Virus record (IMG/VR): IMGVR_UViG_3300013120_000738
Coordinates: 1-64,000 of that record
Length of the DNA: 64,000 nucleotides
Direction: 5' to 3' (one strand)
This document shows positions 33,795-55,508 of the stretch, piece after piece. A program made the position numbers and the translations under genes. Under the pieces are notes generated by a model. That model saw nothing but the letters and a program-made list of their open reading frames with translations. It was not told the origin of the DNA and searched no databases. Numbering within the stretch: the stretch's first letter is position 1; each line of letters begins with the position of its first letter.

Positions 33795-34772
33795 TTACCC
33801 TTTATTAATAGGGTTCTCCAAGTCTAGATCCATGGTTACCATCATCCGGATGAGTTCTTTAAAGCTTATTTCGGGCTCCCATCCGAGCTCCTTCTTAGCC
33901 TTACTAGGATTTGAATGCAATAAATTAACGTCAGCAGGCCTCAAAAATTTCGGATCAATCTCCACATATTCTTCATAATCCAGCCCAACACACTCGAATG
34001 CTAATTGGGCTAATTCTCGTACGCTATGTGTTTCACCGGAACCAATCACAAAATCCCCAGGCTCATCTTGTTGGAGCATCAACCACATAGCCCTAACATA
34101 ATCCTTAGCATGGCCCCAATCCCTCTTAGCATCCATATTACCAAGATATAACTTATCCTGCAACCCTAATGAAATCCTGGCAGCAGCTCTAGTGACTTTC
34201 CGTGTCACAAATTCATATCCGCGTCTTTCAGATTCATGATTGAATAATATACCATTACTGCAGAACATATCATAGCTCTGCCTATAATTTATAGTAGTCC
34301 AATATGCTGCCAACTTCGCAATAGCATATGGACTCCTCGGTCTAAATGGAGTATTCTCATCTTGTGGCGTCTCCGCTACATCTCCGTATAATTCACTACT
34401 ACTGGCCTGATAAAACCGCACATTCTTATCAACAAGTCGTATGGCTTCCAAGACCTTGAAAACACCTAAAGAATTGATACCAACAGTAGTGATAGGGTGA
34501 TTCCAACTAGCGGGAACAAATGATTGTGCTGCCAAGTTATACACTTCGTGGGGACGTATTTTATCGATCAATTTCATAACCGAAGATTGATCAGTAATAT
34601 CCCCAAAATGCATAGTGATTGAGTCAAGTATATGATTTATCCTAGCAGTATTCGGCGTACTAACACGCCTTGATGCACCATGTACATCGTAATCCTTTTC
34701 TAGTAAGAATTCCGCAAGGAATGATCCATCTTGACCAGTAATACCTAGAATCAATGCGCGTTTCTCAGACAT
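33795..34772 (-). CDS. gmd: GDP-mannose 4,6-dehydratase
   Basis: [48 protein letters not shown]. Confidence 0.95.
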
Positions 34773-34820
34773 AAGCTCCTCCAAAGATAGATTATGAAAT
34801 ATATACAACAGAGATAAATT

Positions 34821-35312
34821 ATGCCAAGAACAGAAACAGGTTGGTCAGCATACAGGACATGGTATCATCCTGTAGAACAGATACGCGATAGTGTGCATTC
34901 TATTGCATTTGACGAAGAACAAACGAATTGGCTTCTAGGCGATGAAGATATAGATTTTCCCGACCCACATACAGAATCTCTAGATGGCCTCGCTCCATTA
35001 ATGATAGAAAATAATCTACATGGAAAATGCATCTTAATGATACAATTCTATATTGAATCAGTCACTATAAACGATCATGAAGAACAAAACGAAGAACTAA
35101 GTAGTGCTTATCTATTAAAATTAGATGATTATGGCAACGAAGTTGCATCAGTACGCGTGCCGGAGACCATAGCAATGCCAATAGCAAAAGCATTTAAAAG
35201 AGAGATACAAGATACCCCATACGAGATTGATCGAGAGTGGAACCACTCAGATGAGATTCAAGAGGACTCAATACCTGATATAGTTGCATCACTCATCACA
35301 GAAGATCCATAA
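34821..35312 (+). CDS. Hypothetical acidic protein
   Basis: 163-aa ORF. Confidence 0.6.
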
Positions 35313-35349
35313 ATACATCTAGCGTATTTAAAGAGTGAAACTGCAGATG

Positions 35350-35416
35350 GGTTCCGATCGTTTCGGAACCAGTCCCCGTGTTTCGATCCTAGTAACGGGG
35401 GATCGAACACGGGGAC
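35350..35416. terminator. Tandem hairpins between convergent genes
   Basis: GGTTCCGA/TCGGAACC (8 bp), then GTCCCCGTG-t-TTCGATCC / GGATCGAA-CACGGGGAC (17 bp). Confidence 0.65.
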
Positions 35417-35420
35417 AATT

Positions 35421-37601
35421 TTATACTTCGGCTTCGACGGCTTCTTTATCCGGCTTCTCCAGCACAACCTCTCCATCGATCGCCTTCTTAAGGTAATCTA
35501 TGGAAATAATACCACAGCCGTACTTCTCAGCCTTCTTCGTTTTATTAGAACTGCTTGTTGCATCCTTCTGGACAAGAAAGTCCAATGCCTTAGACACACC
35601 AGATTTAACCGTGCCACCTAATCGTTCGATGTCACCGATATAAGCCCTAGTGCCTGTTAAGCAGAAAGACAGGCCTGTAAAAATTTTCCCTTCTGCCGGT
35701 TGAGTCATCACTCCATCACCATCGGTGTCAACCGGTTCATCCTCCTGAGTCTCTTCTTTGATCGTGACACCAACCGACCGCAACTTCTCGATCAAGGGGC
35801 GGCACTCATCGATACCCTTCCGGATTGACTCACGAATAGTGTCACCGAATCCGGGGATCTGAAGTGTAGCCAACTTCTGATCATCAAGCCAATCATCAAG
35901 AGCATCCAATTGACCACTCGCCGTACCTCGCAAGATCTCAACACGGCGGCGACCGAGCAGATCAATTCCAAGAGATCCTAAGAAAACATGAAGAGGTAAG
36001 CACTTCTTCGATGCGATATTCTTCACGATTTCCGAAGCTCGTGACTCGCCGATACGCACACCGCCATCAAGTTCAACATCCTTCATCTGATCAACGGCCA
36101 AGGTGTACAAATCAGCTGGGTCACCAACAAGACTATTATCCCACAGAGCCTTCAAGATCGTGTCACCGATCCCAAGGATTCCGGTACCTTTCTTCGAAGT
36201 CCCAATCCAATGATCAATCTTGCCAAGACCCACCGCTGGGCACTGAGAACTTGAACAATATGTGATAGCACCAGTCTTGCCCCTCATAGTCCTTGTCGTA
36301 GGTTCACCACAAGTTGGGCACCGCTTCGGTTCTTCGATTTGTTGGCGTGTAACATGTTTACGAACTCGACGCGTGATTTTCGGGATAATATCACCCGCTA
36401 GGATTACCTCGACGGTATCACCAATTGCGACGTCAAGACGATTGATCTCGTCCCAATTGTTCAAAAGGGCGTGAGTAACATTCACACCGCCGACGCGAAC
36501 TTCCTCAAGCAAAGCCGTAGGAATAACAGCCCCGGTATGGCCAACCGTCAAGATCACATCTTTAAGCGTAGTTTGGCCCGAGTAGTGCGGGAACTTGATC
36601 GCTCGAGCATACTTCGGACGCAGACGAGTCTTCTTGTCGGCAGTCACAAAGACATCTTGATGTGCAGCTTGATTCAAGCACACTACCACGCCATCGATCG
36701 CGAATGGAAGTTGTTCACGGCCGTCAAGTGTAGCTGCATAGAATTTCTTGACGTCGTCGATCGTTTTGCACACCTTGTGAGGAACAGGTCTAAATCCCAA
36801 TTGCTTCAGAAATTTGAATTTACCTGATTCCGTAGCGAATGGGTCGCCTGGCACTCCACCGTCACCGGCTTCAACATTGAATGCGATAAATCGCATTCTC
36901 TCACTATCTTGACCATCATCACGGCTGAAGCAACCATTACCAATAGCACGAGCATTGCTCTGGTCCTTTTCATCAATATCATCAAAGGGTTTGCCAAGGT
37001 CACGGGATCGGATCACTTTCCAATCCTCAGTATAGAGAATGGCCTCACCACGCACTTCCAAATCCAAAGCTTCCTCTAGGACTGTTGGGAGTCCTTGGAA
37101 GTTTGCACCGTTGGCGGTGATATCTTCGCCGACTGCCCCATTACCTCTCGAGGCTACCCGAACAAGTTTACCGGCCTTATAGCTGGCGCAGATACTGCCA
37201 CCATCGATCTTGAGCGATGTACAGACCTCTACAACACCATCGTCCTTGATCTTCTTGCAGACACCGGTGTACCAAGAATCGTACCCAAGGATACCGTCAT
37301 CAGTATTATCGAGCGAACCCATTGGGATAGCGTGAGTGACTTTATCACGCAGTTCGGCTTCGCTGAAGGGGGCACCAACCCGATCGATACGCTCGTCATC
37401 TGGTGCTTTTGCTTTGAGAGCCGGACGGAGGAGATCATACTCCGCATCGGTCATAATCGCTTCCGAGCCAACGCGGTAATATGCGTGGTCAGCCTTGTCG
37501 ATGAGCAATTGAAGCTTGTGAACCGGCAAGCTGTTGATCGCGGCTGCAAAGCCGTCTTCGTGGTGGCGTGAAGCCTTGATGAGGTCTTGTGCTGATGCCA
37601 T
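35421..37601 (-). CDS. ligA: NAD-dependent DNA ligase
   Basis: KIDG adenylation motif, RGNG..GEDIT, EVRGE, OB fold, CP.C zinc finger, HhH, BRCT. Confidence 0.95.
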   Translation of the reverse strand: MASAQDLIKASRHHEDGFAAAINSLPVHKLQLLIDKADHAYYRVGSEAIMTDAEYDLLRPALKAKAPDDERIDRVGAPFSEAELRDKVTHAIPMGSLDNTDDGILGYDSWYTGVCKKIKDDGVVEVCTSLKIDGGSICASYKAGKLVRVASRGNGAVGEDITANGANFQGLPTVLEEALDLEVRGEAILYTEDWKVIRSRDLGKPFDDIDEKDQSNARAIGNGCFSRDDGQDSERMRFIAFNVEAGDGGVPGDPFATESGKFKFLKQLGFRPVPHKVCKTIDDVKKFYAATLDGREQLPFAIDGVVVCLNQAAHQDVFVTADKKTRLRPKYARAIKFPHYSGQTTLKDVILTVGHTGAVIPTALLEEVRVGGVNVTHALLNNWDEINRLDVAIGDTVEVILAGDIIPKITRRVRKHVTRQQIEEPKRCPTCGEPTTRTMRGKTGAITYCSSSQCPAVGLGKIDHWIGTSKKGTGILGIGDTILKALWDNSLVGDPADLYTLAVDQMKDVELDGGVRIGESRASEIVKNIASKKCLPLHVFLGSLGIDLLGRRRVEILRGTASGQLDALDDWLDDQKLATLQIPGFGDTIRESIRKGIDECRPLIEKLRSVGVTIKEETQEDEPVDTDGDGVMTQPAEGKIFTGLSFCLTGTRAYIGDIERLGGTVKSGVSKALDFLVQKDATSSSNKTKKAEKYGCGIISIDYLKKAIDGEVVLEKPDKEAVEAEV

Positions 37602-37671
37602 TTTGGACTCCCTATTTGCGTTTTAAATACCTTCCAAGATATTGTTACAAATAGGGGTATGGCAGTTAAAT

Positions 37672-38925: not shown

Positions 38926-39000
38926 TTGACATACCCCAGATATATCTTTGTGAATAATTATTTAACAAGGCTACATGTATTATCACAACGGAGGGCTAAA

Positions 39001-39734: not shown

Positions 39735-39740
39735 CACAAA

Positions 39741-40614: not shown

Positions 40615-40635
40615 AACAACCTCCGTAAATACCAT

Positions 40636-41173: not shown

Positions 41174-41495
41174 ATGACATCCTCAGCATCCAAACATTAT
41201 CTGTAACTACTCTAAATTTGTGAGTAATCCCAGACATGTCAGTTATAGTTACTAATCGCCCTAGATGCCTAGTACCATCAGATAATACTATACAAGTACT
41301 CGGATTACAACGCGACTCAAAAACAATAGCAACATCTATCCCAGGTTCTTCAAATCCATAATCAGCTAAATAAATATCACGATCAATTATAGAACGTACC
41401 GCAAAGTATTGAAATTCTGTGTTAGGAAATAAATATGGATCATTATGATGGTATGGATCGGTTAGGTATGGATCGTTCATTATATCTACTAGCAA
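41133..41495 (-). CDS. Hypothetical protein
   Basis: ORF in the operon. Confidence 0.5.
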   Translation of the reverse strand: MLVDIMNDPYLTDPYHHNDPYLFPNTEFQYFAVRSIIDRDIYLADYGFEEPGIDVAIVFESRCNPSTCIVLSDGTRHLGRLVTITDMSGITHKFRVVTDNVWMLRMSYEDFKAIPERSFR

Positions 41496-42285
41496 CTTTA
41501 TAGTATCTTAATGGTCTAGGTCCATACAAACTTTGTTCTCCAGGACCGGCAATTCCAGAAGCAGCATAATGCCAAAAGGTCGTGGTCAACAATGGTGTAG
41601 CCCTACGAGCCAAATACAGAGCAATCAACCTCTCAAACATATGTGGTGTCCAAAAACCAATATCACGTAACCTAAGATTCCTAGCTATTCTAGCAAGCTT
41701 ATCACCAAGATAATCAAAAGTAGCTCTAGTACAAAGAAATTGATGTGAGTAAATCAACCTTGGTTGAATATCCATAGCCCAATCATGTATATCGGCATCA
41801 TATTCCTTCATAATCTCCCACACACTAATCTGATCATCAAAAAGATGTCTAAAGAACGGATCATAATTGGGAGTACAATATACCTCTTCCGGTATCACCC
41901 AATCGTCCCATATACCAATATATCTCGACGGTGCTGTTAGTCCAATCGCTCGTAATTCATCCTCTCGAAGCCATTTATTCAATTTTCTCCAGGTCTCACC
42001 CGCCTTAAAGTGTATACCTATATCAGCATGCATGATAGCAACATCATCGTTACCTATAAGATTATCCGCATGCTCCCAAATAGTAAGAATAACAGATGTT
42101 TCGAACAAACCAGAATTCCAAGAAGCATACGTGGGAAAGAAATCATTAGATTCTGACAAATCCGCATTCTTTACTTTAGTAGTACCACATGCAATCCTCC
42201 TAGCATTTACAATCTGGCTCCTAAATGCCTTCTTAGAAATAATGTCAGTCGACTGTGGATGACAGAGTAAAAATGCTTGAATCAT
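41443..42285 (-). CDS. DUF4422-like glycosyltransferase-related protein
   Basis: ETSVILTIWEH, MHAD, HQFLCTRATFDY...L, FERLIALYL resemble DUF4422 patterns. Confidence 0.55.
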   Translation of the reverse strand: MIQAFLLCHPQSTDIISKKAFRSQIVNARRIACGTTKVKNADLSESNDFFPTYASWNSGLFETSVILTIWEHADNLIGNDDVAIMHADIGIHFKAGETWRKLNKWLREDELRAIGLTAPSRYIGIWDDWVIPEEVYCTPNYDPFFRHLFDDQISVWEIMKEYDADIHDWAMDIQPRLIYSHQFLCTRATFDYLGDKLARIARNLRLRDIGFWTPHMFERLIALYLARRATPLLTTTFWHYAASGIAGPGEQSLYGPRPLRYYKVASRYNERSIPNRSIPS

Positions 42286-42300
42286 AATAAAATCTACAGT

Positions 42301-43140: not shown

Positions 43141-43273
43141 TGCGACTATCATTAATTACAGACGATACTACCAGACGCGACTTCTTAAAAAGAGAAAAGA
43201 ACGGGAAGAAGCAGACCGCTGGAAACCAGACCCCGCCGCATCAAGTATGCATCAACCATGGTTCGAATCAGTA

Positions 43274-43567
43274 CTAGAATCCCATCTCAGTTTCTATAAG
43301 TAATCTACCAGGTTTTGTCCCATCACTCTTCTGATATAAGTGGCTTCTATATTCATATACTTTACCGTCAAAATGAAGTTTCACACCACCTGTCATACCC
43401 TCCAGTCGCAGTGAAAAATCATTGCTTAAATCAGTCTCTGTTCCAACAACAGGAGCATTAGCTTCATCTATTCCAACTCCCTCTGGAAATAATATCAAAA
43501 AATATATAACCTTTTGCCCATTATGTTCTAATGGTTCTGGATTTTTATCTAGTCTATAATATCTCAT
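43274..43567 (-). CDS. Hypothetical protein
   Basis: 97-aa ORF. Confidence 0.55.
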   Translation of the reverse strand: MRYYRLDKNPEPLEHNGQKVIYFLILFPEGVGIDEANAPVVGTETDLSNDFSLRLEGMTGGVKLHFDGKVYEYRSHLYQKSDGTKPGRLLIETEMGF

Positions 43568-44412
43568 TCAATAAATCCCATTTTCTTATCTATAGACAAG
43601 CGTGCTTCTTTTATTCCAAATGATTTCACATGAATATTATTACCATCATCTGCTTCAAGTTCAGCCGAAACATAACTAGTTAACTCATTATCACACCAGT
43701 GCATATGTGTGCCAAGCATCTCTGGGAAACGCGATTTCCATTTATTATGTAATAATCTAAAGAATTGCCAATATCGACTCCTGCCAGCCATACTAGATGA
43801 ATATGCCCCATAATGAATTATAGGTAAGTCTGCCGCATACACACCAAATCCAGCCGCCCTCGCCTGCAAACACATATCGGCCCCATAAAAATGGAACCCA
43901 TTAAACATCGTATCAAACCGCAGTCCTGTTTTCTTATTAAGAATAAATAAGCATTCATCAACACAATGAACTCTTGTCGGCGACTTTAAACCATCCCAAT
44001 ATGGTTCCGAATCAACATCATCTGTATGCCAGACACTACCTACCGCCACAGTATCCAATAATACTGCACCACCCCATGGCCCTATATCTCGCCTCTCCCT
44101 ATTAAGATCTATCCCAGCAGCACCAAGTATTCCCCAATCTTTATCCAATTTCCCCAATGTCTCTTCCGCTATCGCAAACCAATCCTCTACGAGTGTAATA
44201 TCTTGGTGAGCAATAACCAGATTATCTGATCTTGCAACCTTAATTCCTAAATTTAGAGCAAGGCTAGCTGAATATAACCCACTATCATTTAGTACGGGAA
44301 TAATTTCTACGTCAAAATTACCACGGCACCGGTCTATTGAATCAAGCAAGCATTCTTGATAAATGTCCGGCTCAGAGATACAAGTAATAACAGAAAATAT
44401 AGGCATCATCAA
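43564..44412 (-). CDS. Glycosyltransferase-like protein (GT2-related, Glyco_tranf_2_5)
   Basis: S...ALN.GI..A..D.+V+.HQD, G+LGAAG, VDEC, FHFYGADMCLQ. Confidence 0.8.
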   Translation of the reverse strand: MMMPIFSVITCISEPDIYQECLLDSIDRCRGNFDVEIIPVLNDSGLYSASLALNLGIKVARSDNLVIAHQDITLVEDWFAIAEETLGKLDKDWGILGAAGIDLNRERRDIGPWGGAVLLDTVAVGSVWHTDDVDSEPYWDGLKSPTRVHCVDECLFILNKKTGLRFDTMFNGFHFYGADMCLQARAAGFGVYAADLPIIHYGAYSSSMAGRSRYWQFFRLLHNKWKSRFPEMLGTHMHWCDNELTSYVSAELEADDGNNIHVKSFGIKEARLSIDKKMGFIE

Positions 44413-44436
44413 AATTACAGTAAAGGAGAATGAATC

Positions 44437-44667
44437 ATGGCTACACGGGTAACTACCATCACCAATATTTCAACCCAGACAATACCTATCTTGCTGAACG
44501 CTATCGACCTCGATAAAGCGGCTGCAACATCGGATATTGATCCCACCCGTGCCGAGCAATTATCGATAGCGCCAGGTGCAGAACTAGTTATCGAGACACA
44601 AAGAATTGACATAGGTCAATTGGAACAACTACAGAGAAAGAATCTCATCACCTTTATTGGTTACTGA
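44437..44667 (+). CDS. Small protein paralogous to 17657-17914
   Basis: N.STQ.IP+...Q+.+APG...Q+E.LQ+K.LI. Confidence 0.7.
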   Translation: MATRVTTITNISTQTIPILLNAIDLDKAAATSDIDPTRAEQLSIAPGAELVIETQRIDIGQLEQLQRKNLITFIGY

Positions 44668-45128
44668 GTCACTAAAACAAACCTATCGTCTAGATATTGT
44701 CTCAATACGGGCAGCACTTGTTTAGGTCGCAATCTACCATTAGCACATCCCACCATCGGTAGAACAATCATATCGGCCTCTAATATATCTATTAACCTAG
44801 CTAATTGAATAGTAGATCTACGTATCAAATCGATATCCGAGTCCTGTTGCCAAGACAACCAGGGTTTATCCTCATCTAGTGGTTTAGTAGGAAATAATAT
44901 AAATTTCTTTTTCCTGTATGGTAGTGTTGCTGTATTAGCACCGAATTTTTGGCATTTCTTACCATACCATATAGGTAGATCTGGATCTATCCCAGCAGCA
45001 GCTCTGGCTATACCAGCACCCATAGGATTAGAACCGTCTTTCTTCCAACCGATGTTGGTAGTAATGACGATCCACTTCCTTCTGTCGTGGAAGTTCCAGA
45101 TGTTACCAACTCTCTCAATCATCAACAA
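44661..45128 (-). CDS. Macrodomain (ADP-ribose binding/hydrolase, DarG-like) protein
   Basis: GNIW, ITTN, MGAGIA, FPTK, LPMVGCANG.L. Confidence 0.8.
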   Translation of the reverse strand: MLMIERVGNIWNFHDRRKWIVITTNIGWKKDGSNPMGAGIARAAAGIDPDLPIWYGKKCQKFGANTATLPYRKKKFILFPTKPLDEDKPWLSWQQDSDIDLIRRSTIQLARLIDILEADMIVLPMVGCANGRLRPKQVLPVLRQYLDDRFVLVTQ

Positions 45129-45453
45129 TCAAGTCAAGAATTCGTGCAGGGTTTATTTTGTCATAATAACCGCAATGTGGCTTATCTGTACACTCCCGTA
45201 TGGTCTTCACAGCAGAACTTATAAAATGTAGAACATCAGCATCTGGATTACTGATCATTATTCCTTCATCTTTACCAAGATACACCGCGTATAAATAGTC
45301 ATCCTCTATAATAAATATTAATTTTCGCCATCTACCAAGACCATCTGTGACTTCTGATTTAACTATATCCGATGCCTCTTTGCGCACCGGCAATTTCATA
45401 CTTCGTAAGATATCGATCACAAGATCAGCAATCAATATGGTTGCTCCCCACAA
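45115..45453 (-). CDS. Hypothetical protein
   Basis: ORF in the operon. Confidence 0.5.
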   Translation of the reverse strand: MWGATILIADLVIDILRSMKLPVRKEASDIVKSEVTDGLGRWRKLIFIIEDDYLYAVYLGKDEGIMISNPDADVLHFISSAVKTIRECTDKPHCGYYDKINPARILDLIVDD

Positions 45454-46094
45454 AACTCATCAAAATCTATCTCAGTATCAGGATAATATAGATCGATTGC
45501 ATATTTCTCAGCATCTAATACACGCTGTAACAATTCTGGGGTATACTTTGCAAGTTGCTTAGATGACATCTCGCCCATAGACGAATCGTTTATTCTCCCA
45601 GCATCTATAAATTTCTGCTCATCGAATTCTACACCGGCATTCTGTAATATATTAGTAGCATCAGTTACCAAGTTCTCCATAGTACCAACGTTGATTTCTC
45701 CTGATGGTACTCTCTCAATATAGACCTTATATAAAGTTGATACCCAACCGGGTTTATGAATCAATAGATTATCGACCCACTCCCGAAAATCATTAGATGA
45801 GCAATTTCTATCTATCGGATGGCTCATATGCCACCCATGCTTAACCCTAAATGCCCATCTAGATTGATACCACGTAATCGGATGCCTAACAAAAGCAAAA
45901 TAATAAGCGGATTTAATAGTGTCCGGATTAATATGATTAGCTAGTTCTGGAAAATGCGAGTGTTGTTGCCCAACATGTGAGTATGGTTTACCGGTAGCCA
46001 GCTTAATAGCCTCACGGAACCACGATCCTCCAGTCTTAGGGATATGAAGAAATATCCATGTCCGTCCATCAGAACACTCGCCCATCAAAGCCAT
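45432..46094 (-). CDS. Sulfotransferase family protein
   Basis: FLHIPKTGGS (5'-PSB loop) and FVRHP..WYQS (3'-PB). Confidence 0.85.
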   Translation of the reverse strand: MALMGECSDGRTWIFLHIPKTGGSWFREAIKLATGKPYSHVGQQHSHFPELANHINPDTIKSAYYFAFVRHPITWYQSRWAFRVKHGWHMSHPIDRNCSSNDFREWVDNLLIHKPGWVSTLYKVYIERVPSGEINVGTMENLVTDATNILQNAGVEFDEQKFIDAGRINDSSMGEMSSKQLAKYTPELLQRVLDAEKYAIDLYYPDTEIDFDEFCGEQPY

Positions 46095-46276
46095 TACGAA
46101 GTCCTTCTTGTCAAAGCCTCTACCATATGCCTAGCTATTGCATCAAGGACATCCTCACCATCCTCGATCTTATGCCCAAAAACTTTGATGGCTTGGTCAT
46201 CATTCTCCACACTACCCCATTTATATTCGGTAATCTCGTCTAATCGGTTCCGAAACAATTCAAAAACGTCATCCAT
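46094..46276 (-). CDS. Hypothetical protein
   Basis: 60-aa coupled ORF. Confidence 0.5.
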   Translation of the reverse strand: MDDVFELFRNRLDEITEYKWGSVENDDQAIKVFGHKIEDGEDVLDAIARHMVEALTRRTS

Positions 46277-46283
46277 GATACAC

Positions 46284-47231
46284 CTACTCTATTATCTTCT
46301 CAGCTTCCTCCTCAAAACCAAGTGCAGTAAACATGGTGCTCATCCGATGGTGGTATGTATGGTGTTGTAAGACAGAATCTCTTTGTTTAGTAGCAAGAAG
46401 AAACCGCTCCTCCTCATTCTCAGGGCGACTATAATAAACACATCTTTCAAGATACTCTTCGGGAGTAGTAGCGATTACTATACCTTCGATAATCCTATCC
46501 AATCTTGGTACTGCATCATGTACCGCCAAAGCACCACATAGTGCTACTTTGAAAGCTCTTTCAGGTAGATCAATACCAAAACTTCTTGTATGCTGCTCCG
46601 ATATACAAGGTCCCACCTTGCCACTATTGAAGAACGCACATACTTTATCATCGGCTATAGCACCGCTAGAAATACCATCTGGCCAATCGCCCCAACCGTG
46701 CAGTTTATGTGTTATCTTGCCATTCTGCAACACCGGCATCAAGCATTCAGTTATTGTAATAGCCTTATATGGCCAGATACCACCAAGATAGACGACGTCG
46801 AATTTTCTTTCCCCGTCTAGTAATTTATATATAACCTTATCACCAGCTGTGGGCATAGGCACCCAAGTAATTCCGGCTTTCTGTGACCAATAAGACCATA
46901 GAATCCTATCAGAATCATATCCGTAACCGAATACTACATCGGGCTTTTGTTTACGCACCCAATTAATAGCATCTGTTGATTCTGATACCCCATCGATAGT
47001 GCTAGGACCCCATGGATTGACATGGATAGCTATCTTCGCACGCCTGTTTCTTGGTATTTCTTGCTTGTGGCCAGAACAACCCATATAAATATCTGGGTTA
47101 AAATCATCCCAGCTAGCCCTATCATTATTCCATCGGCGAACTTCATGCCCTTTATCACGAAGAGCATTGATCCAGCCATCTGAAATATAACCAAAAGCAC
47201 CACCAGGCCTGTGACATATAAGGACTCTCAT
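46284..47231 (-). CDS. GT-B glycosyltransferase (CgeB-like)
   Basis: DVVYLGG, LHG.GDW, ERAFKVALCGA, HTY.HR. Confidence 0.8.
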   Translation of the reverse strand: MRVLICHRPGGAFGYISDGWINALRDKGHEVRRWNNDRASWDDFNPDIYMGCSGHKQEIPRNRRAKIAIHVNPWGPSTIDGVSESTDAINWVRKQKPDVVFGYGYDSDRILWSYWSQKAGITWVPMPTAGDKVIYKLLDGERKFDVVYLGGIWPYKAITITECLMPVLQNGKITHKLHGWGDWPDGISSGAIADDKVCAFFNSGKVGPCISEQHTRSFGIDLPERAFKVALCGALAVHDAVPRLDRIIEGIVIATTPEEYLERCVYYSRPENEEERFLLATKQRDSVLQHHTYHHRMSTMFTALGFEEEAEKIIE

Positions 47232-47482
47232 TACTCACCATCTACAATAGTTGGGATTTGTTCTCTAGTAACAACAATATTTAGTTCTTCTGGGACCGCA
47301 TAAATCGTGTAACCAAGGCACGCATCAACCACAAAACGCCCTAGGCCTTGACCATGATCTGTTGGTGTAGAAACCACCACGCCAGTTATCTGATACTTAG
47401 CACAGAATCTAGCAGCATCACTGCTATTCAACTTACCATCGTCATCTAGTAGCCGGAATTTGACGATATCACCACTTTTCAT
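47231..47482 (-). CDS. Hypothetical protein
   Basis: 83-aa coupled ORF. Confidence 0.5.
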   Translation of the reverse strand: MKSGDIVKFRLLDDDGKLNSSDAARFCAKYQITGVVVSTPTDHGQGLGRFVVDACLGYTIYAVPEELNIVVTREQIPTIVDGE

Positions 47483-49440
47483 TTCGCATGCCTCTTTAAT
47501 AAATTGCCCCAGCCCTGTTCAACCAAACGTTTATGTTGCATTTTGACTCTTTTCTCAATCCCTAATACAACGAGATTTTTCTCTTTGATTTTATTAGTCT
47601 CATGATGCTCATTCCAGTATGGTACACGACCATGCCACAAATGCAAGAAATCGAAAATCCTATCCTCTTTCCAATCACTAGCTCCAGATAACCTAGCGTA
47701 GAAATCACAGTCCTCACATCCGTAACCCCAATAGTCTTGGCAAAATGCACCAACTCTCCAATATGCCTGAATAGTACACCCTACTGATCCACCTTCAAAA
47801 TATCCAACAACTCTATCACAATTTATATCATCATCCACTTTTCCTAAATCACATATACGATCTGTTGATTGCTTGTCGGCATAAACAACAGTACTACCAA
47901 GGTGGCATGATTCACGATCTTCCAAGATACGAGCAACAGATCTTGTATAATTTCCCTGAACAAGCAGATCAGCATCATGTAACACCACAGTCGGTGTAAT
48001 CACCTTCGATACACCTGTGTTAAAAGCTAATGACTTATTAAATAACGGATTCTGGGCGGTAACGTGGCAATAAGTAACAGGATTGAAGTTATCGAGATTT
48101 ATCTTGGTATTGGCATCTTGTTCAACAACTATAATATGAACAACAGGATATCGTTGTGCTCTTATATTATTGACAGCGGCTAAGATGCACTTTTCTCTGC
48201 CGGTATTTCTAAATGGTATTACATAAGATATTTCCGGCAATCTAGATCTTTCTGTTGGACCTATCCTCCTATAAGTTCTTTTAGCAAATATCTTCCTTCC
48301 TTCTCTGAGATGTGTACTTCTATCTTCCATAGCAGAAGTATCTTTATGGATCTTGAAATAAAGTTCTGACCCATCGACATCCCAAAATCCTGGATTTTGT
48401 AATTCAAATTCCCATGCCTTCTGAGACCAATCTACATGTTCCATTCCATATAGACCATATGCTTCATCAAAATAACCACATTTAACAAGCATTTCCCTCG
48501 AGAAAGCCAATACTGCACCATGTGGCTTTTCATCCACTACTCGCAGATTTAGGTTACCTCTTTTCTGCAATTTGCCTTCGCCAGCACCATACACACCAAC
48601 CTGTCTGTAAGAGAAATGGTGCATACCTGTCTCTATCATAGCGTCATGGTATAAAGTGTCCCAGCCCTTTCTTAAAACTTCAACATCATCATTTAGAATC
48701 ATACCGTAAGCAAATCTCGACAAGCACCGTATCAATCTATTACTATTGCCAGCTATACCTAACCTCTCTGAATTCTTAATAACCACAATATTATGATTGC
48801 TTGATAAATCATTCAGATATTGTACGGTTGGTTTATCAGTACTAGCGTCATCGCTGATAAAGAGGGTAGTTTTAGACAAATCAGTATTGGTGAGAATTGA
48901 ATTTACTAATCTCTTTAAACAATCTGCTCTATTATATGATAGTATTCCAATTCCTATATTATTACTTATTGGGAAGATATTGTTCTTTAAATTGGATTGA
49001 AGCAATCTATTTGCATCTACATTTACTCTTCTACCGACGACTTTTGATCTCTTCCTTTGTCGCGGTGCAGCCCTCTCTTGTCTAATTATACTACGAGCTC
49101 TTGATACTCTAACTGCTTTCCGTGCTTCTTGCCGGGCTTTTTTACGTTCTTGTAGTTTACTTCTTTCTTCCTGCAACTGAGATTGATCTGGAGTCTCTTT
49201 CTTCTCTTGCCTCCTAGTCTTTGTCTTACCTAATATCACTTTATTTCTAATCAAGGACTGCGGTTGTTTCATACGTTTATTTGGTGTTGATTCATTTACG
49301 AGTTTTATAAATCCTCTAGTCCTATATCGTTCAAAATATTCACCCAGCACTCTTTTCTGGCGTGGTCGCAGAATAATCTCCTTGCCATCGGGGCCTATAA
49401 GATGAACTGCATAATTATTGTGATTAATATATTCGGGCAT
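47479..49440 (-). CDS. Two-domain glycosyltransferase (GT2 + GT7-like) with N-terminal extension
   Basis: ILSYNR...DDAS...LNDD...FDE.YGLYG.EHVD; second domain IPFR...EQD...FNKS...N.G...HDAD...YWGYGCED.DF. Confidence 0.85.
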   Translation of the reverse strand: MPEYINHNNYAVHLIGPDGKEIILRPRQKRVLGEYFERYRTRGFIKLVNESTPNKRMKQPQSLIRNKVILGKTKTRRQEKKETPDQSQLQEERSKLQERKKARQEARKAVRVSRARSIIRQERAAPRQRKRSKVVGRRVNVDANRLLQSNLKNNIFPISNNIGIGILSYNRADCLKRLVNSILTNTDLSKTTLFISDDASTDKPTVQYLNDLSSNHNIVVIKNSERLGIAGNSNRLIRCLSRFAYGMILNDDVEVLRKGWDTLYHDAMIETGMHHFSYRQVGVYGAGEGKLQKRGNLNLRVVDEKPHGAVLAFSREMLVKCGYFDEAYGLYGMEHVDWSQKAWEFELQNPGFWDVDGSELYFKIHKDTSAMEDRSTHLREGRKIFAKRTYRRIGPTERSRLPEISYVIPFRNTGREKCILAAVNNIRAQRYPVVHIIVVEQDANTKINLDNFNPVTYCHVTAQNPLFNKSLAFNTGVSKVITPTVVLHDADLLVQGNYTRSVARILEDRESCHLGSTVVYADKQSTDRICDLGKVDDDINCDRVVGYFEGGSVGCTIQAYWRVGAFCQDYWGYGCEDCDFYARLSGASDWKEDRIFDFLHLWHGRVPYWNEHHETNKIKEKNLVVLGIEKRVKMQHKRLVEQGWGNLLKRHAK

Positions 49441-49442
49441 GC

Positions 49443-50099
49443 CTACCTCTTCACTTCAACATATAATGGCACAAAATTATCTGGTGTCACACTATGCATT
49501 CTAAATCTGCTTGGTTTCAGTATTAAATCACCACTGTATGAACCAGATCCATATTCAATATACTCCATAGCACGATCGTCAAGAATCTCGATCTTTTGTA
49601 CTTCTTGTGTTGGAAAAACTTTGCTGAAAACATCTCTAAGCATTCCAGGAGATGCAAACTTATTTATCCCAACTTGGATGTCTACTAATATAAGCTCACC
49701 ATCAACAATGGCAAAGAAGAATTGTGCTTGATCTAATTTGATTAAGCGCATCGTTTCATATAGCACCATAATCCTGTCTTTAACCAGTTCGTTAGCATGC
49801 GTGACTAATGTAGTAGGCTTATCAGATACTATGTCTATCTTATTACCGAGCCAATCCCCGCATATTATAACAACCTGATCTTTCTGTGGTTGCCTATATA
49901 TCAACGCCGATAGACCAGCATTACCATAATGTCTTATAACGTAACAGAATATATCTTTTATAGGCGCGGAATCGAATGGGAGTAATTCAGGGTACTTTAA
50001 TAGCTCTGGTAACTTTAATTTAGATGTACCAGACGTTCGCATTTTGGGACGTTTCGTGCTGGAGAATCGCGAACTTTCCATTTGCGGCGGTTTTGACAT
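49443..50099 (-). CDS. Hypothetical protein
   Basis: 218-aa ORF. Confidence 0.6.
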   Translation of the reverse strand: MSKPPQMESSRFSSTKRPKMRTSGTSKLKLPELLKYPELLPFDSAPIKDIFCYVIRHYGNAGLSALIYRQPQKDQVVIICGDWLGNKIDIVSDKPTTLVTHANELVKDRIMVLYETMRLIKLDQAQFFFAIVDGELILVDIQVGINKFASPGMLRDVFSKVFPTQEVQKIEILDDRAMEYIEYGSGSYSGDLILKPSRFRMHSVTPDNFVPLYVEVKR

Positions 50100-51820: not shown

Positions 51821-51839
51821 AATGGGTACACCACACCGC

Positions 51840-52100
51840 TTATGAGATATGCTTGCAGTTCACGTTAGCACATTGAATTCTCTGACGACTAGCAATAACA
51901 ACAAGCATCGTTGGGTATCCACATTTCGGGCACCTTTGACGTGGTACTACATATTGTCGTTTTATCTCGACATTTCTTGTAGAAGGCTTACGAGAAACTC
52001 TATGAATCGCCGCTCTCTTTTTCTTCTTCGTAGATGGGCGATTTACTACTTGTTGTCGAACAGTTCTAGGACTACCTTTTCCACCACCACAGCAAGGCAT
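51840..52100 (-). CDS. Small basic Cys-rich protein
   Basis: MPCCGGGK...CPKC...C...C. Confidence 0.6.
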   Translation of the reverse strand: MPCCGGGKGSPRTVRQQVVNRPSTKKKKRAAIHRVSRKPSTRNVEIKRQYVVPRQRCPKCGYPTMLVVIASRQRIQCANVNCKHIS

Positions 52101-52102
52101 AG

Positions 52103-52270
52103 TTACACTCTATATCTGTTTAGGTTATTGGCTGGCTGTGTGGCAACAATTATAGGTTTTCTAGCATTTAATCTAATAGTTTTCTTTTCTATCGCCCTCT
52201 TTGAAAGAGAACGACCCGCCGGTCTAGAAATCCTAATAGGTTGTTTGCCACCACAAGATCCACAAGACAT
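52103..52270 (-). CDS. 55-aa basic protein MSCGSCGGK... (below ORF-track cutoff)
   Basis: Hand translation; SD GGAG; fills the operon gap. Confidence 0.65.
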   Translation of the reverse strand: MSCGSCGGKQPIRISRPAGRSLSKRAIEKKTIRLNARKPIIVATQPANNLNRYRV

Positions 52271-52285
52271 TATACACTCCTATTT

Positions 52286-52942
52286 CTAGGTTTGTACAAA
52301 TATCGTCTTTGGATCTATATTAGCGGCAAAATCACGCCACCGGCATAAACAAGGCTCTAAGAGAGCAAGAGACACCATCACAGGATTCTTCTTAGAATGG
52401 GAAACATCTAGTTCTATTTCACCACATCTATCATAGCAATTCACGAGGATATGTGGGAATGGTAGTGTACCAGGCACCGGGGAAGTAGTAATATCAAACT
52501 TATTGACTGGATACCATGTTTCTATCAAACACTGTGGAAATGCTATCCAGTCGAAGTTTGGATGGGGTTTAAAAAACAATAATGGATATCTAATTTGTTC
52601 TATCTTCTCAGACAATATTATAGCATCATATGTTACCTGATGCCACCACTCTGTGAACTTAGCCGTTTTAGGACTAGACATAAGGCCATCTAGGCTAAAT
52701 CCCTGGCCTTTCTTGGCCTCTATGGCGAATATAGTATCACCCTCTACAGGTATTACATCGCCTACACCCTCTACCACCTTTACATCATCTCCACGCCCTT
52801 CAACCCGCCGCCGCCGAAATTCCTTACCAGTCCATTCTTTGAGTAATTTAGCCACACGGCGCTCATGAGCCTTAGCAGTCCTGACATTACTCTTGCCAGT
52901 TTTGGAGAATTTCTTTTTCTGTTCTTCTGTCAACTCGGCCAT
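52286..52942 (-). CDS. Holliday junction resolvase-like PD-(D/E)XK nuclease
   Basis: K.HER.VA..L, GDV, IEAK. Confidence 0.7.
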   Translation of the reverse strand: MAELTEEQKKKFSKTGKSNVRTAKAHERRVAKLLKEWTGKEFRRRRVEGRGDDVKVVEGVGDVIPVEGDTIFAIEAKKGQGFSLDGLMSSPKTAKFTEWWHQVTYDAIILSEKIEQIRYPLLFFKPHPNFDWIAFPQCLIETWYPVNKFDITTSPVPGTLPFPHILVNCYDRCGEIELDVSHSKKNPVMVSLALLEPCLCRWRDFAANIDPKTIFVQT

Positions 52943-52987
52943 AATTACACCTCAAAGTTACAATACCTTATGTACAGGAGTGATATC

Positions 52988-53563
52988 ATGGCAACCAACA
53001 AAATAACTTTCAAAATACAGAAGGCAATATTTCGTTTCCTAGGTGACATAAAATGGGCTGGTATACTTCACCCATTCTGGTTCGTAATTAATGCTAGAAA
53101 TTGCCGATTAAAAGGCAAACATTATCGGCAACTAGAACCATTAATCAAACCCGGTGATATCATTATACGTCGGTTTGAAGGATATGTTGATAAATGGTTC
53201 ATCCCCGGCTGGTGGAATCATGCGGGATTATACGTAGGTGATAACGAAATTATCCACGCTATCAGTGACGGTGTACTCATAGAAGATCTTATAGACTTTA
53301 TGAGAACTGATCATATGATAGTACTACGAGCACCGGAGAAATACCGAGAAGAAGCTATCGAATTAGCCAGGAAAGCTGTCGGAAGTGAATATGATTTCGA
53401 TTTTGATTTCAAGAGTACATTAAGATTTAGTTGTACAGAACTTATAAGTCATTGCTTCCCAGGACTTATCACTGGGTCAAAACGATTCGGTAGAGTTACT
53501 GTAGTAGCGGATGATATTGTCAACAATTCACAACTAGAAGTAGTTTGGGATTCTACTAAATGA
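52988..53563 (+). CDS. Permuted papain-like amidase (YiiX/YebB, NlpC/P60)
   Basis: PGDII, W.HAGLY, IHA, YDF.F, FSCTEL. Confidence 0.8.
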   Translation: MATNKITFKIQKAIFRFLGDIKWAGILHPFWFVINARNCRLKGKHYRQLEPLIKPGDIIIRRFEGYVDKWFIPGWWNHAGLYVGDNEIIHAISDGVLIEDLIDFMRTDHMIVLRAPEKYREEAIELARKAVGSEYDFDFDFKSTLRFSCTELISHCFPGLITGSKRFGRVTVVADDIVNNSQLEVVWDSTK

Positions 53564-54360
53564 GAGTGCTAATAAATGAAGACAAAAAGCTCTGCTTCTG
53601 GACATCACAGAAGGCTGGCAGCACAACACTTTTTATATGGTTTCTAAAGACTATTGGCCAATATGAAAGAGCTTTAAAAGTCGGACTAAGAAGATATAGA
53701 AATCAAAGTGGTAAGTGGGCATCATGGAGCCAACGCAAAAAAGAATTCCTCCGAAACCCAGATCAAGATAAATATTATAAAGTTGCTCTTGTTAGAAATC
53801 CATATGCAAGGGCCGTAAGCATATTTCTCCACTGCCTTGAACGGCATCCACAAAATATTAGTGATAGGAAATTAAATCCTAGATTATTAGCTGAAAATCC
53901 ACGAGTAATAGTAAGAGTCGATTATAGCAAATTCGGTTTGACACCAAACCTATCATTCCATGATTTCCTATTATTGTTGATAGAAAACCAAAAAACGAAA
54001 AAAGGGTGGTTTGAAGGACATACACTACCACAATTACGCAGAAGAATCGACATATCGTATTTCAGTCAGATTATTAAATTAGAAAGCATCGAAGCAGAAT
54101 TAGACCAACTAAATCAAAGATTCGAATTAGGTGTCCAATATAAAGATTGCGACGTACCTCACCATACTGAGAGACGCACAGAAGAAGAGACTTTCGAAAC
54201 AGAACATTACAATCTTGGATATAGGAGCCTATATGATCTATATGATGGAGTATTCCCAGATTTCCATCATTTCTATACACCAGAAATTATAGATTTATTA
54301 GCTGAAATCCACGGCATAGATTTAGAAAGTCTGGATTATCCCAGCCCATTAGCTAGGTAG
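53560..54360 (+). CDS. Sulfotransferase family 2 protein
   Basis: QKAGSTT, VRNPY.R.VS, H.LPQ, IIKLE. Confidence 0.8.
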   Translation: MRVLINEDKKLCFWTSQKAGSTTLFIWFLKTIGQYERALKVGLRRYRNQSGKWASWSQRKKEFLRNPDQDKYYKVALVRNPYARAVSIFLHCLERHPQNISDRKLNPRLLAENPRVIVRVDYSKFGLTPNLSFHDFLLLLIENQKTKKGWFEGHTLPQLRRRIDISYFSQIIKLESIEAELDQLNQRFELGVQYKDCDVPHHTERRTEEETFETEHYNLGYRSLYDLYDGVFPDFHHFYTPEIIDLLAEIHGIDLESLDYPSPLAR

Positions 54361-55499: not shown

Positions 55500-55508
55500 A
55501 ATAGGGGA

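What the first reader, a model, noticed from the sequence alone, without database searches (positions are those of the whole stretch)
33795..54360. Phage-encoded glycan synthesis and sulfation toolkit
Seen: gmd (33795), DUF4422-like (41443), GT2-like (43564), sulfotransferase (45432), CgeB-like GT (46284), GT2+GT7 (47479) and a second sulfotransferase (53560) are interleaved with core genes rather than forming one island. Established: Gmd starts GDP-fucose/rhamnose/perosamine synthesis. These GT families typically act on surface glycans and proteins, unlike T-even DNA glucosyltransferases, and none is linked to a base-modifying enzyme in this window. Inference: the phage builds a sulfated deoxysugar glycan on its virion, or on the infected cell surface, as camouflage or for receptor masking.
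Basis: partly seen in the sequence, partly recalled or inferred. Interest (0 to 1): 0.62.

Follow-up and report, generated by a model that had tools for sequence, protein, structure and literature searches.

The report
Conserved jumbo-phage glycan sulfation module
An uncultured marine jumbo phage carries intact genes for making, linking and sulfating sugars; the core of this set is conserved across a whole clade of 230-410 kb phages and most likely decorates a phage component, probably a virion protein, with an acidic glycan.

Summary

The context changes the picture in three ways:
- **Genome.** The window is the first 64 kb of a T4-superfamily jumbo phage of at least 294 kb, found in marine metagenomes.
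- **Conserved core.** Five of the seven genes (DUF4422-like GT, GT2_5, sulfotransferase 45432, CgeB-like GT, 653-aa double GT) form a compact co-directional block. This block is syntenic, between DNA ligase and exonuclease/gp32/PolA, in a clade of at least 63 uncultured contigs up to 408 kb. A Gmd-grade enzyme is present in all 8 large clade genomes tested.
- **Accessory layer.** This phage adds 14 GT genes in all, 5-6 sulfotransferases, a pyruvyl transferase, and Fcl-like, GalE, RmlA/B-like and Glf enzymes. It also encodes a UDP-sulfoquinovose synthase that none of the 8 relatives has.

No glycosyltransferase or sulfotransferase has a membrane segment. No priming transferase, APS kinase or ATP sulfurylase was found, and no flippase-like polytopic protein stood out. 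No ThyA-type or TET-type base hydroxylase was found in this phage or in the 8 large relatives.

The best reading is cytoplasmic glycosylation and sulfation of a phage-encoded acceptor, probably a virion protein. The target remains unproven. This is a new variant of a known kind.

The parts
33795..34808 (-). GDP-mannose 4,6-dehydratase (Gmd); likely true start at 34772
   Evidence: Pfam PF16363 7e-130. NCBIfam TIGR01472 scores 456.6 bits against a cut-off of 415. A Gmd-grade SDR is present in 8/8 large clade genomes. Start-codon check.
41443..42285 (-). DUF4422-like GT-A glycosyltransferase; part of the conserved core
   Evidence: No Pfam hit. Atlas structure and feature neighbours are DUF4422/GT2_5 clusters, TM 0.59-0.67. 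Syntenic orthologs at E 1e-109 to 1e-116 in 354-370 kb relatives. Found in 28/61 clade loci.
43564..44412 (-). GT2-like glycosyltransferase (Glyco_tranf_2_5); part of the conserved core
   Evidence: Pfam 3e-11. Orthologs at about 1e-102. Found in 30/61 loci.
44661..45128 (-). Conserved 155-aa protein of unknown function inside the module
   Evidence: No Pfam hit. Orthologs at 1e-55 to 1e-60 in the same position in relatives.
45432..46094 (-). PAPS-type sulfotransferase; part of the conserved core
   Evidence: Pfam Sulfotransfer_2 2e-6. The motifs HIPKTGG, a His and RHP..YQSR are invariant or nearly so in 19 orthologs. AF2 model pLDDT 94.5. Best structural match is heparan sulfate 2-O-sulfotransferase 3F5F, Z 11.1, rmsd 3.7, 178 aa. 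Found in 28/61 loci.
46284..47231 (-). CgeB-like GT-B glycosyltransferase (Glyco_trans_1_2); part of the conserved core
   Evidence: Pfam 1.6e-14. Orthologs at about 1e-134. Found in 48/61 loci.
47479..49440 (-). 653-aa double glycosyltransferase (N-terminal domain, GT2, then GT2/GT7C); the anchor gene of the module
   Evidence: Pfam. At least 481 homologs, the top 120 at 47-59% identity, many on 100-370 kb contigs, about 10 carrying an intein. Invariant residues include NDD 250-252, DAD 489-491, E576-D577, H600 and H603. The intein of P0003 sits inside the invariant GYG-C|ED motif.
52865..53563 (+). Permuted papain-like protein (Peptidase_C92/YaeF-like), translationally coupled to the second sulfotransferase; accessory
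   Evidence: Pfam PF05708 3e-15. JGI calls a 197-aa product in identical copies of this phage. Absent from 61 clade loci.
53560..54360 (+). Second, lineage-specific Sulfotransfer_2 protein; divergent 5'-PSB loop
   Evidence: Pfam 2.4e-11. It has FLKTIGQ where the others have IPKTGG, and no aligned His. Its only relative is itself. Absent from 61 clade loci.
35421..37601 (-). NAD-dependent DNA ligase (context: one border of the conserved region)
   Evidence: Pfam and PHROG. Syntenic in relatives.
49443..50099 (-). RNA-ligase-like nucleotidyltransferase-fold protein directly upstream of the double GT (context; not a glycan gene)
   Evidence: Model pLDDT 91. Foldseek matches to Trl1/Rnl2 at E 4e-5, TM 0.5-0.6. 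Found in 49/61 loci.
54648..58672 (-). 5'-3' exonuclease, gp32-like SSB, 186-aa protein and PolA piece (context: the other border)
   Evidence: Pfam. Found in 50-53 of 61 loci.

Best explanation
The window holds the conserved core of a phage-autonomous glycosylation and sulfation system.

**Shown**
- Gmd is a true equivalog. Four GT genes carry five GT domains, and a sulfotransferase sits with them. Catalytic motifs are intact and held by purifying selection.
- The five non-Gmd genes form a syntenic block in a clade of 230-410 kb jumbo phages.
- All the enzymes are soluble.
- No PAPS synthesis genes, no priming transferase and no flippase-like membrane protein were found in 294 kb. The flippase part rests on a hydrophobicity scan only.

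**Inferred mechanism**
- Early in infection the phage draws on host GDP-mannose, UDP-sugars and PAPS.
- Gmd, with the Fcl-like enzyme at contig 130 kb, supplies a GDP-6-deoxyhexose.
- The GTs build a short oligosaccharide directly on an acceptor in the cytoplasm, and the sulfotransferase adds sulfate.

**Inferred acceptor**
- The enzymes and their order are conserved at 35-60% identity across phages from different habitats, so the acceptor is most likely phage-encoded.
- No route to a hydroxylated DNA base was found, so that acceptor is most likely a virion protein.
- The precedents are mycobacteriophages, chloroviruses and Megavirinae.

**Accessory layer**
Strain-specific genes would elaborate or vary the glycan into a strongly anionic coat. 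These are:
- the papain-like plus second sulfotransferase cassette in the window
- a 129-149 kb island with a UDP-sulfoquinovose synthase, GT47, GT77-like and GT92-like enzymes and Glf
- three to four further sulfotransferases
- a pyruvyl transferase
For: - **Family assignments and motifs:**
- **Sulfotransferase fold:**
- **Clade-wide conservation and synteny:**
- **Intein at the catalytic motif of GT domain 2:**
- **Gmd-grade SDR in 8/8 large clade genomes:**
- **No membrane segments in any GT or ST, and no Wzx/Wzy-like polytopic protein:**
- **No Bac_transf:**
- **No hydroxylase route:** ThyA family absent; TET/JBP absent; C5-methyltransferase in only 1 of 10 records. All known DNA glycosylations need one of these routes (PMC13326640 abstract; bioRxiv 10.1101/2023.12.21.572611 abstract).
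- **Nearest cultured-phage relatives of the double GT:** the mycobacteriophage GTs. Citing papers link these to capsid and tail-tube glycosylation (PMC12619734, PMC11256854).
- **Giant-virus parallel:** the Megavirinae fibril-glycosylation clusters combine 4,6-dehydratases, GTs, a roughly 263-aa sulfotransferase, papain-like proteins and a pyruvyl transferase (PMC10117803). This parallels the pairing at 52865-54360 and the pyruvyl transferase on G001.
Against: - No direct evidence identifies any acceptor.
- The module sits in the replication region and not the structural region. This fits early expression but also fits a nucleic-acid target.
- No Ser/Thr-rich or collagen-like acceptor stands out.
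- Promoter analysis gave no timing information.
- The phage genome is incomplete: 294 kb of roughly 340-360 kb. A hydroxylase, PAPS genes or export genes could lie in the missing part, although complete relatives lack the hydroxylases.
- Similarity to the mycobacteriophage GTs is only about 24% over half the protein.
- The sulfotransferase ortholog is detected in only about half of the clade loci.
Confidence: 0.42

Rival explanations
1. **Host envelope remodelling.** The enzymes act on host lipid-linked or envelope glycans (LPS, capsule, exopolysaccharide). The host supplies the priming transferase and the export machinery. The altered surface of the infected cell would give superinfection exclusion, grazer or phage avoidance, or a sulfated slime.
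For: - This is the usual reading of the large GT and epimerase sets of marine cyanomyoviruses: 13 GTs and 22 cell-wall genes in S-SCSM2R (PMC12801897).
- GT2, GT47, GT92-like and pyruvyl-transferase families usually build polysaccharides.
- Sulfated polysaccharides are typical of marine habitats, and the phage is marine.
- The accessory layer varies between clade members as surface-antigen loci do.
Against: - No GT or ST has a membrane anchor, and no priming transferase or Wzx/Wzy-like protein was found.
- A five-enzyme block kept in order at 35-60% identity across phages of diverse habitats argues for an acceptor that travels with the phage, not for variable host glycans.
- An intein in the catalytic motif marks a gene under strong, lasting constraint.
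Confidence: 0.25
2. **Nucleic-acid hypermodification.** The conserved block glycosylates, and in part sulfates, phage DNA or another nucleic acid as an anti-restriction measure. It would do so through a base-activation chemistry not yet described.
For: - The block lies between DNA ligase and exonuclease/gp32/PolA, directly beside an RNA-ligase-fold protein and a PDDEXK nuclease.
- Relatives carry a 2OG-Fe(II) oxygenase and a PRTase-like gene in the same block.
- T-even DNA glucosyltransferases are likewise early genes among DNA-metabolism genes (general knowledge).
- Phage GTs can build multi-sugar glycans on DNA (PMC13326640; bioRxiv 10.1101/2023.12.21.572611).
- One paper cites Iyer et al. 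2013 for GT/sulfotransferase nucleotide-modification systems in phages (PMC10829341).
Against: - No ThyA homolog in this phage's 294 kb or in 8 large relatives, 6 of them at least 90% complete.
- No TET/JBP match (no positive control).
- A C5-methyltransferase in only 1 of 10 records.
- This phage lacks the oxygenase found in its relatives yet keeps the GTs.
- Five GT domains plus the many accessory GTs exceed what any described DNA glycan needs.
Confidence: 0.12
3. **Glycolipid or soluble product.** Part of the toolkit serves host metabolism instead of a polymer. In particular, the UDP-sulfoquinovose synthase would boost the sulfolipid SQDG to spare phosphorus for phage DNA synthesis.
For: - The SqdB-like enzyme is full-length and 60-67% identical to bacterial SqdB.
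- The phage comes from a marine setting.
- A viral SqdB has been reported once, as an auxiliary gene in a Mu-like virus (PMC7785012).
Against: - SqdB lies inside a dense GT island at contig 134-143 kb, not beside a complete SqdX-type GT4. The only GT4-like ORF is 208 aa.
- SqdB is absent from 8/8 relatives, so it cannot explain the conserved core.
Confidence: 0.08

Closest known systems
Megavirinae (Moumouvirus australiensis, Cotonvirus) virion-fibril glycosylation gene clusters (PMC10117803)
   Same: Both are virus-encoded sets of 4,6-dehydratases, several GTs including multi-domain ones, and a sulfotransferase of about 263 aa next to papain-like proteins. A pyruvyl transferase occurs in related clades. 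In both, a conserved part is combined with a clade-specific part.
   Different: Those are giant viruses of amoebae, and they also encode a SAT/APS kinase. This is a tailed phage with no PAPS genes in 294 kb. Homology between the two sulfotransferase and papain-like pairs was not tested. Sulfation is unproven in both systems.
Mycobacteriophage virion glycosylation (Che8/Che9c-type GTs; Freeman et al. 2023, cited in PMC12619734 and PMC11256854)
   Same: These are the best cultured-phage matches of the double GT. They are soluble GT2/GT7C-type enzymes acting on phage proteins in the cytoplasm.
   Different: Identity is only about 24% over half the protein. Those phages have one or two GTs, no sugar-nucleotide genes and no sulfotransferase. 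The primary paper could not be read here.
Cell-wall/LPS gene sets of large marine cyanomyoviruses (S-SCSM2R, S-SCSM1, P-SSM2; PMC12801897)
   Same: They are marine T4-superfamily phages with up to 13 GTs and several sugar epimerases. Lone sulfotransferase-family genes are annotated in P-SSM7, S-T4, S-SCSM1 and ACG-2014f.
   Different: No psbA here. The capsid is only about 33% identical. The sulfotransferases here have no sequence-level match to theirs. In P-SSM7 the gene sits alone after gp5. Those phages have no SqdB.
T-even/RB69-type DNA glycosylation (PMC13326640; bioRxiv 10.1101/2023.12.21.572611)
   Same: These are phage GTs encoded among DNA-metabolism genes, and they can make multi-sugar products.
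   Different: Those systems need a ThyA homolog, or a methyltransferase plus TET. Neither was found here or in the clade.
Moraphages (aquatic jumbo phages with four core GT orthogroups; PMC12619734)
   Same: They are uncultured aquatic jumbo phages of 200-307 kb in which GTs belong to the core genome.
   Different: Moraphages are placed by PolB. This clade uses a split family A polymerase. That paper mentions no sulfotransferases.

Membership tests
GDP-mannose 4,6-dehydratase (Gmd) | Score above the curated equivalog cut-off over the full length | tested here: met
   TIGR01472 scores 456.6 bits against a cut-off of 415, model positions 1-340/342.
PAPS-dependent sulfotransferase (Sulfotransfer_2, PF03567) | Pfam score above the gathering threshold | tested here: met
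   45432 copy: 28.5 bits. 53560 copy: 44.7 bits. The cut-off is 22.
PAPS-dependent sulfotransferase (Sulfotransfer_2, PF03567) | 5'-phosphosulfate-binding loop (PKxGxT/S) and 3'-phosphate motif (RxP...S) | tested here: met
   45432 copy: HIPKTGG, plus R70-H71-P72 and S78-R79, invariant or nearly so in 19 orthologs. 53560 copy: the 3' motif is present, but the 5' loop is degenerate (FLKTIGQ) and no aligned His is present.
PAPS-dependent sulfotransferase (Sulfotransfer_2, PF03567) | Sulfotransferase fold | tested here: met
   Model pLDDT 94.5. The top 50 Foldseek PDB rows are all sulfotransferases, but at E of 0.011 or weaker. VIA gives Z 11.1 to HS 2-O-sulfotransferase, tied with others at Z of about 10.
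PAPS-dependent sulfotransferase (Sulfotransfer_2, PF03567) | Sulfate transfer from PAPS to a defined acceptor | not testable with these tools
   This needs an enzyme assay.
Inverting/retaining GT-A glycosyltransferases (GT2 with GT7C-type motif) | DXD metal/nucleotide motif in each domain and the GxGxED motif | tested here: met
   N250-D251-D252, D489-x-D491, G572/G574/E576/D577 and H600/H603 are invariant in 40 sequences.
Phage DNA glycosylation system | An enzyme that makes a hydroxylated pyrimidine (a ThyA homolog for 5hmC/5hmU/5hoC, or a C5-methyltransferase plus TET) | tested here: not met
   PF00303: 0 of 2 own records and 0 of 8 clade genomes. PF12851: 0 of 10, with no positive control. 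PF00145: 1 of 10. The phage's own genome is incomplete.
Lipid-carrier (Und-P) surface polysaccharide pathway | Phage-encoded priming phosphoglycosyl transferase and a flippase, polymerase or ABC exporter | tested here: not met
   No Bac_transf. No polytopic Wzx/Wzy-like ORF and no membrane segment in any GT (a hydrophobicity scan only; PF00953 and the Wzx/Wzy Pfam families were not searched). Host genes could substitute.
Virion protein glycosylation system | A glycosylated virion protein | not testable with these tools
   The phage is uncultured. No obvious Ser/Thr-rich acceptor was found.
UDP-sulfoquinovose synthase (SqdB/SQD1), contig 136128-137315 | Equivalog-level score over the full length | tested here: inconclusive
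   NF041015 scores 543.5 bits, E 2.6e-163, model positions 1-383/384, just under the cut-off of 575. It is 60-67% identical over its full length to bacterial homologs.
Moraphage lineage | Family B DNA polymerase marker | tested here: not met
   The window and its relatives carry DNA_pol_A pieces. PolB itself was not searched for.

The most novel reading that the evidence does not exclude
The conserved, intein-bearing GT and sulfotransferase block in the replication module installs a sulfated glycan on phage DNA, or on another nucleic acid, by a base-activation chemistry that uses neither a ThyA homolog nor a TET enzyme. That would be a new class of nucleic-acid hypermodification.
Probability: 0.08. 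Interest if true: 0.92.

Novelty: new variant of a known kind. Interest (0 to 1): 0.6.

Why it matters
Virus-encoded glycosylation is established for chloroviruses, mimiviruses and some mycobacteriophages. No sulfated or sulfoquinovose-bearing viral glycan has been demonstrated.

Here a sulfotransferase travels with four GT genes as a conserved, syntenic block. The block has an intein in its catalytic motif and is found across a large clade of uncultured aquatic jumbo phages. That level of constraint implies a role central to the phage life cycle.

If the product coats the virion, it would be an anionic, mucin- or heparin-like shield. Such a shield could affect adsorption, particle stickiness in seawater, grazing and defence evasion.

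The module also gives a concrete entry point, because the genes are soluble and expressible:
- for the biochemistry of non-GAG polysaccharide sulfotransferases, which is poorly known (PMC11625862)
- for asking what jumbo phages glycosylate

Tried and rejected
- **T4 late promoter (TATAAATA):** chance-level counts, none upstream of a start.
- **De novo upstream 7-mer enrichment:** no usable promoter motif, so no expression timing.
- **Acceptor hunt by Ser/Thr-rich windows and G-X-Y repeats:** nothing convincing.
- **Moraphage membership:** rejected, since this clade has PolA where moraphages have PolB.
- **Cyanophage host:** no psbA. The host remains unknown. The closest SqdB relatives span many phyla and give no host call.
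- **Sequence searches of both window sulfotransferases against 50,697 phage records:** one marginal hit and none respectively. Structural search showed that this is due to divergence and not to absence of viral sulfotransferases. An early idea that phage sulfotransferases are new was therefore dropped.
- **GAG-like polymer idea:** the only PDB sequence hits were the K4 chondroitin polymerase and HS 2-O/6-O-sulfotransferases. These are weak and generic. UDP-glucose dehydrogenase was not searched. The idea is not adopted.
- **The 218-aa gene coupled to the double GT:** tested as a possible partner or acceptor. It has an RNA-ligase fold and is not counted as a glycan gene.
- **Whole-record searches of the NCBI and JGI relatives L118/L119:** the records are not held.
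- **Papers that could not be read:** Iyer 2013 and Freeman 2023.

Full report
**What the window is**

The window is the first 64 kb of a 227,725-bp IMG/VR viral contig that CheckV rates 63% complete.
- A second IMG/VR record (G001, 122,317 bp) overlaps window 1-55,912 at 99.98% identity. It adds 66.4 kb beyond the contig start, so the genome is at least 294 kb and not closed.
- An identical copy of the double glycosyltransferase lies on contigs up to 340 kb.
- The phage is a myovirus of the T4 superfamily:
  - tail sheath, DnaB, gp32-like SSB, 5'-3' exonuclease, split family A polymerase and NAD-dependent ligase in the window
  - gp23-like capsid, portal and terminase on the extension
- The closest capsid is from an uncultured 595 kb phage (37% identity). 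T4-like cyanophages are at about 33%.
- It has no psbA and occurs in marine metagenomes of two studies. The host is unknown.

**Check of the observation**

- Gmd passes the NCBIfam equivalog cut-off.
- 43564 is Glyco_tranf_2_5, 46284 is Glyco_trans_1_2 (CgeB-like), and 47479 has two GT2 domains with a GT7C motif. 45432 and 53560 are Sulfotransfer_2.
- 41443 has no Pfam hit, but the ESM Atlas places it among DUF4422/GT-A clusters.
- The phrase 'interleaved rather than one island' needs correcting. The stretch 41443-49440 is a compact co-directional block that sits inside the replication module.

**Catalytic integrity**

- In 19 orthologs of the 45432 sulfotransferase (29-50% identity), the 5'-phosphosulfate loop HIPKTGG, a His and the 3'-phosphate motif are invariant or nearly so.
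- Its AlphaFold model (pLDDT 94.5) matches only sulfotransferases. The best match is heparan sulfate 2-O-sulfotransferase (Z 11.1, rmsd 3.7, 178 residues), tied with other PAPS enzymes at Z of about 10.
- In 40 homologs of the double GT, both DXD motifs and the GxGxED motif are invariant.
- The 53560 copy has a degenerate 5' loop and no aligned His, so its activity is uncertain.

**The toolkit is far larger than the window**

| Class | Genes outside the window |
|---|---|
| Sugar-nucleotide enzymes | Fcl-like GDP-fucose synthase; GalE; RmlA-like and RmlB-like enzymes; a UDP-galactopyranose mutase split by one frameshift; an aldo-keto reductase |
| Sulfonated sugar | A full-length UDP-sulfoquinovose synthase homolog: E 2.6e-163; 60-67% identical to bacterial SqdB |
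| Glycosyltransferases | Ten more GT genes: GT2; two GT47 exostosin-like; one GT77-like; two GT92-like paralogs; a short GT-B |
| Modifying enzymes | Two more clear Sulfotransfer_2 genes on the contig; one clear and one weak on the extension; a polysaccharide pyruvyl transferase; a SAM methyltransferase |

The totals are about 7 sugar-nucleotide enzymes, 14 GT genes and 5-6 sulfotransferases. The densest island is at contig 129-149 kb.

**What is missing**

- No APS kinase or ATP sulfurylase, so PAPS must come from the host.
- No priming phosphoglycosyl transferase.
- No membrane segment in any GT or sulfotransferase, and no Wzx/Wzy-like polytopic protein, by a hydrophobicity scan.
- No ThyA-family enzyme.
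- No TET/JBP match, though that search had no positive control.

**The key result: conservation**

- The double GT has at least 481 homologs. The top 120 are full-length at 47-59% identity, many lie on contigs of 100-370 kb, and about ten carry an intein.
- In one intein-bearing homolog the intein sits exactly inside the invariant GYG-C|ED catalytic motif of GT domain 2.
- Sixty-three IMG/VR contigs, up to 408 kb and three with terminal repeats, carry orthologs.
- Two relatives of 354 and 370 kb show the same gene order:
  1. PolA
  2. gp32
  3. exonuclease
  4. PDDEXK nuclease
  5. a 180-aa gene
  6. a 218-aa gene
  7. double GT
  8. CgeB-like GT
  9. a PRTase-like gene (relatives only)
  10. 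sulfotransferase
  11. a 155-aa gene
  12. GT2_5
  13. DUF4422-like GT
  14. ligase

Presence within ±10 kb of the double GT, in 61 loci:

| Gene | Loci with it |
|---|---|
| CgeB-like GT | 48 |
| 218-aa gene | 49 |
| GT2_5 | 30 |
| DUF4422-like GT | 28 |
| Sulfotransferase 45432 | 28 |
| Gmd | 12 |
| Second sulfotransferase (53560) | 0 |
| C92 papain-like neighbour | 0 |

Whole-record searches of 8 large clade genomes, 6 of them at least 90% complete:

| Query | Result |
|---|---|
| Gmd-grade SDR | 8/8 |
| GT2 domain hits per genome | 2-13 |
| SqdB | 0/8 |
| ThyA family | 0/8 |
| TET/JBP (8 genomes plus both own records) | 0/10 |
| C5-methyltransferase (same 10 records) | 1/10 |
| True APS kinase | 1/8 |

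The window therefore combines two layers. One is a clade-wide core: Gmd, four GT genes and a sulfotransferase. The other is specific to this phage: the second sulfotransferase with its papain-like partner, the TAXI-like binding protein and, elsewhere on the contig, the SqdB island.

**Interpretation**

- A block of enzymes kept in order at 35-60% identity, in phages from many samples, points to an acceptor that travels with the phage. Host surface glycans are highly variable and fit this less well.
- All described DNA glycosylations start from 5hmC, 5hmU or 5hoC made by a ThyA homolog, or from 5mC oxidised by a TET enzyme (PMC13326640; bioRxiv 10.1101/2023.12.21.572611). Neither route was found in the clade.
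- That leaves a phage protein, most plausibly a virion protein, glycosylated in the cytoplasm by soluble enzymes.
- There are two precedents:
  - The mycobacteriophage GTs are the best cultured-phage matches of the double GT (PMC12619734, PMC11256854).
  - The Megavirinae fibril clusters also combine dehydratases, GTs, a sulfotransferase next to papain-like proteins, and a pyruvyl transferase (PMC10117803).
- I put this reading at about 0.42. The rivals are host-envelope remodelling at 0.25, a novel nucleic-acid modification at 0.12, and glycolipid or soluble products for part of the accessory set at 0.08.
- The module's position in the replication region is the main argument for the nucleic-acid rival. 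It sits next to an RNA-ligase-fold protein, and relatives have a 2OG-Fe(II) oxygenase there. The target therefore stays open.

**Novelty**

Large glycan gene sets in marine phages are known (PMC12801897). Sulfotransferase-family genes are already annotated in cultured phages and giant viruses: P-SSM7, S-T4, S-SCSM1, SIO1, phiRSL1, Moumouvirus and others. A viral SqdB has been noted once (PMC7785012).

What appears new:
- a conserved, syntenic, intein-marked GT and sulfotransferase module defining a clade of uncultured jumbo phages
- in this phage, the stacking of three anionic chemistries (sulfate esters, sulfoquinovose and pyruvate ketals)
- SqdB, which has no match in 50,697 deposited phage genomes

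**Limits**

- Everything rests on sequence and predicted structure.
- The phage genome is incomplete.
- Absences were tested with single Pfam models.
- The hydrophobicity scan is crude.
- No expression or chemical data exist.

Noticed in passing
contig 141107-142143 (L009:9107-10143), outside the window: The UDP-galactopyranose mutase gene is split by a single frameshift near contig 141,922-141,964. The FAD-binding N-terminus and the rest lie in different frames. This could be an assembly error, a pseudogene or a programmed shift.
   Followed up: partly
window 49443-50099 (-): A 218-aa protein with an RNA-ligase (Rnl2/Trl1) nucleotidyltransferase fold (pLDDT 91, Foldseek E 4e-5). It lies directly upstream of the double GT in 49 of 61 clade loci. 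No obvious KxDG motif was seen in the consensus.
   Followed up: partly
homologs of window 47479-49440 (e.g. P0003): About ten homologs of the double GT carry a mini-intein. In P0003 it is inserted inside the invariant GYG-C|ED catalytic motif of GT domain 2. I am not aware of an intein reported in a glycosyltransferase.
   Followed up: partly
window 52653-54360 (+): A + strand cassette (71-aa ORF, C92 papain-like protein, sulfotransferase) occupies the position where relatives carry DUF6065 plus a 2OG-Fe(II) oxygenase. The giant virus Moumouvirus australiensis also pairs a sulfotransferase with papain-like proteins in its fibril glycosylation cluster.
   Followed up: partly
window 37672-38925 (-): A phage-encoded TAXI/NMT1_3-like solute-binding protein with an N-terminal hydrophobic segment. 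It is absent at this position in relatives. It might serve uptake of a substrate, but its specificity is unknown.
   Followed up: no
window 32026-32490 (-): A small membrane protein of family DUF2585 (E 6e-26) with several hydrophobic segments, close to Gmd.
   Followed up: no
contig 136128-137315 (L009:4128-5315): A full-length UDP-sulfoquinovose synthase homolog inside a GT island. It has no homolog in 50,697 deposited phage genomes, though 12 IMG/VR contigs carry one, including contigs of 241 and 173 kb.
   Followed up: yes
G003 (IMGVR_UViG_3300032132_000001) 357150-357596: One complete clade member (395 kb, terminal repeats) encodes a true APS kinase (E 1.5e-64). Some relatives may therefore supply their own PAPS.
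   Followed up: no
contig 113062-122448 (+), outside the window: A single ORF of 3,128 aa; function not examined. Together with the Ser/Thr-rich 1,009-aa ORF at window 28986-32015 it is a candidate fibre or decoration protein.
   Followed up: no
window 14737-17613 (-): The tail sheath is 958 aa, but only its last 300 or so residues match sheath families. Its best relative is Bacillus phage SP-15 (41% identity). The long N-terminal part is unassigned.
   Followed up: no
G001:116190-117077 and contig 150276-151301: Two radical SAM enzymes, one with a SPASM domain, and two Dam-like N6-adenine methyltransferases. Some of these lie next to sulfotransferase genes.
   Followed up: no
contig 142142-142969 and 147543-148367: Two GT92-like glycosyltransferase paralogs, very similar to each other (phmmer E 8e-116), lie 5 kb apart on opposite strands.
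   Followed up: no
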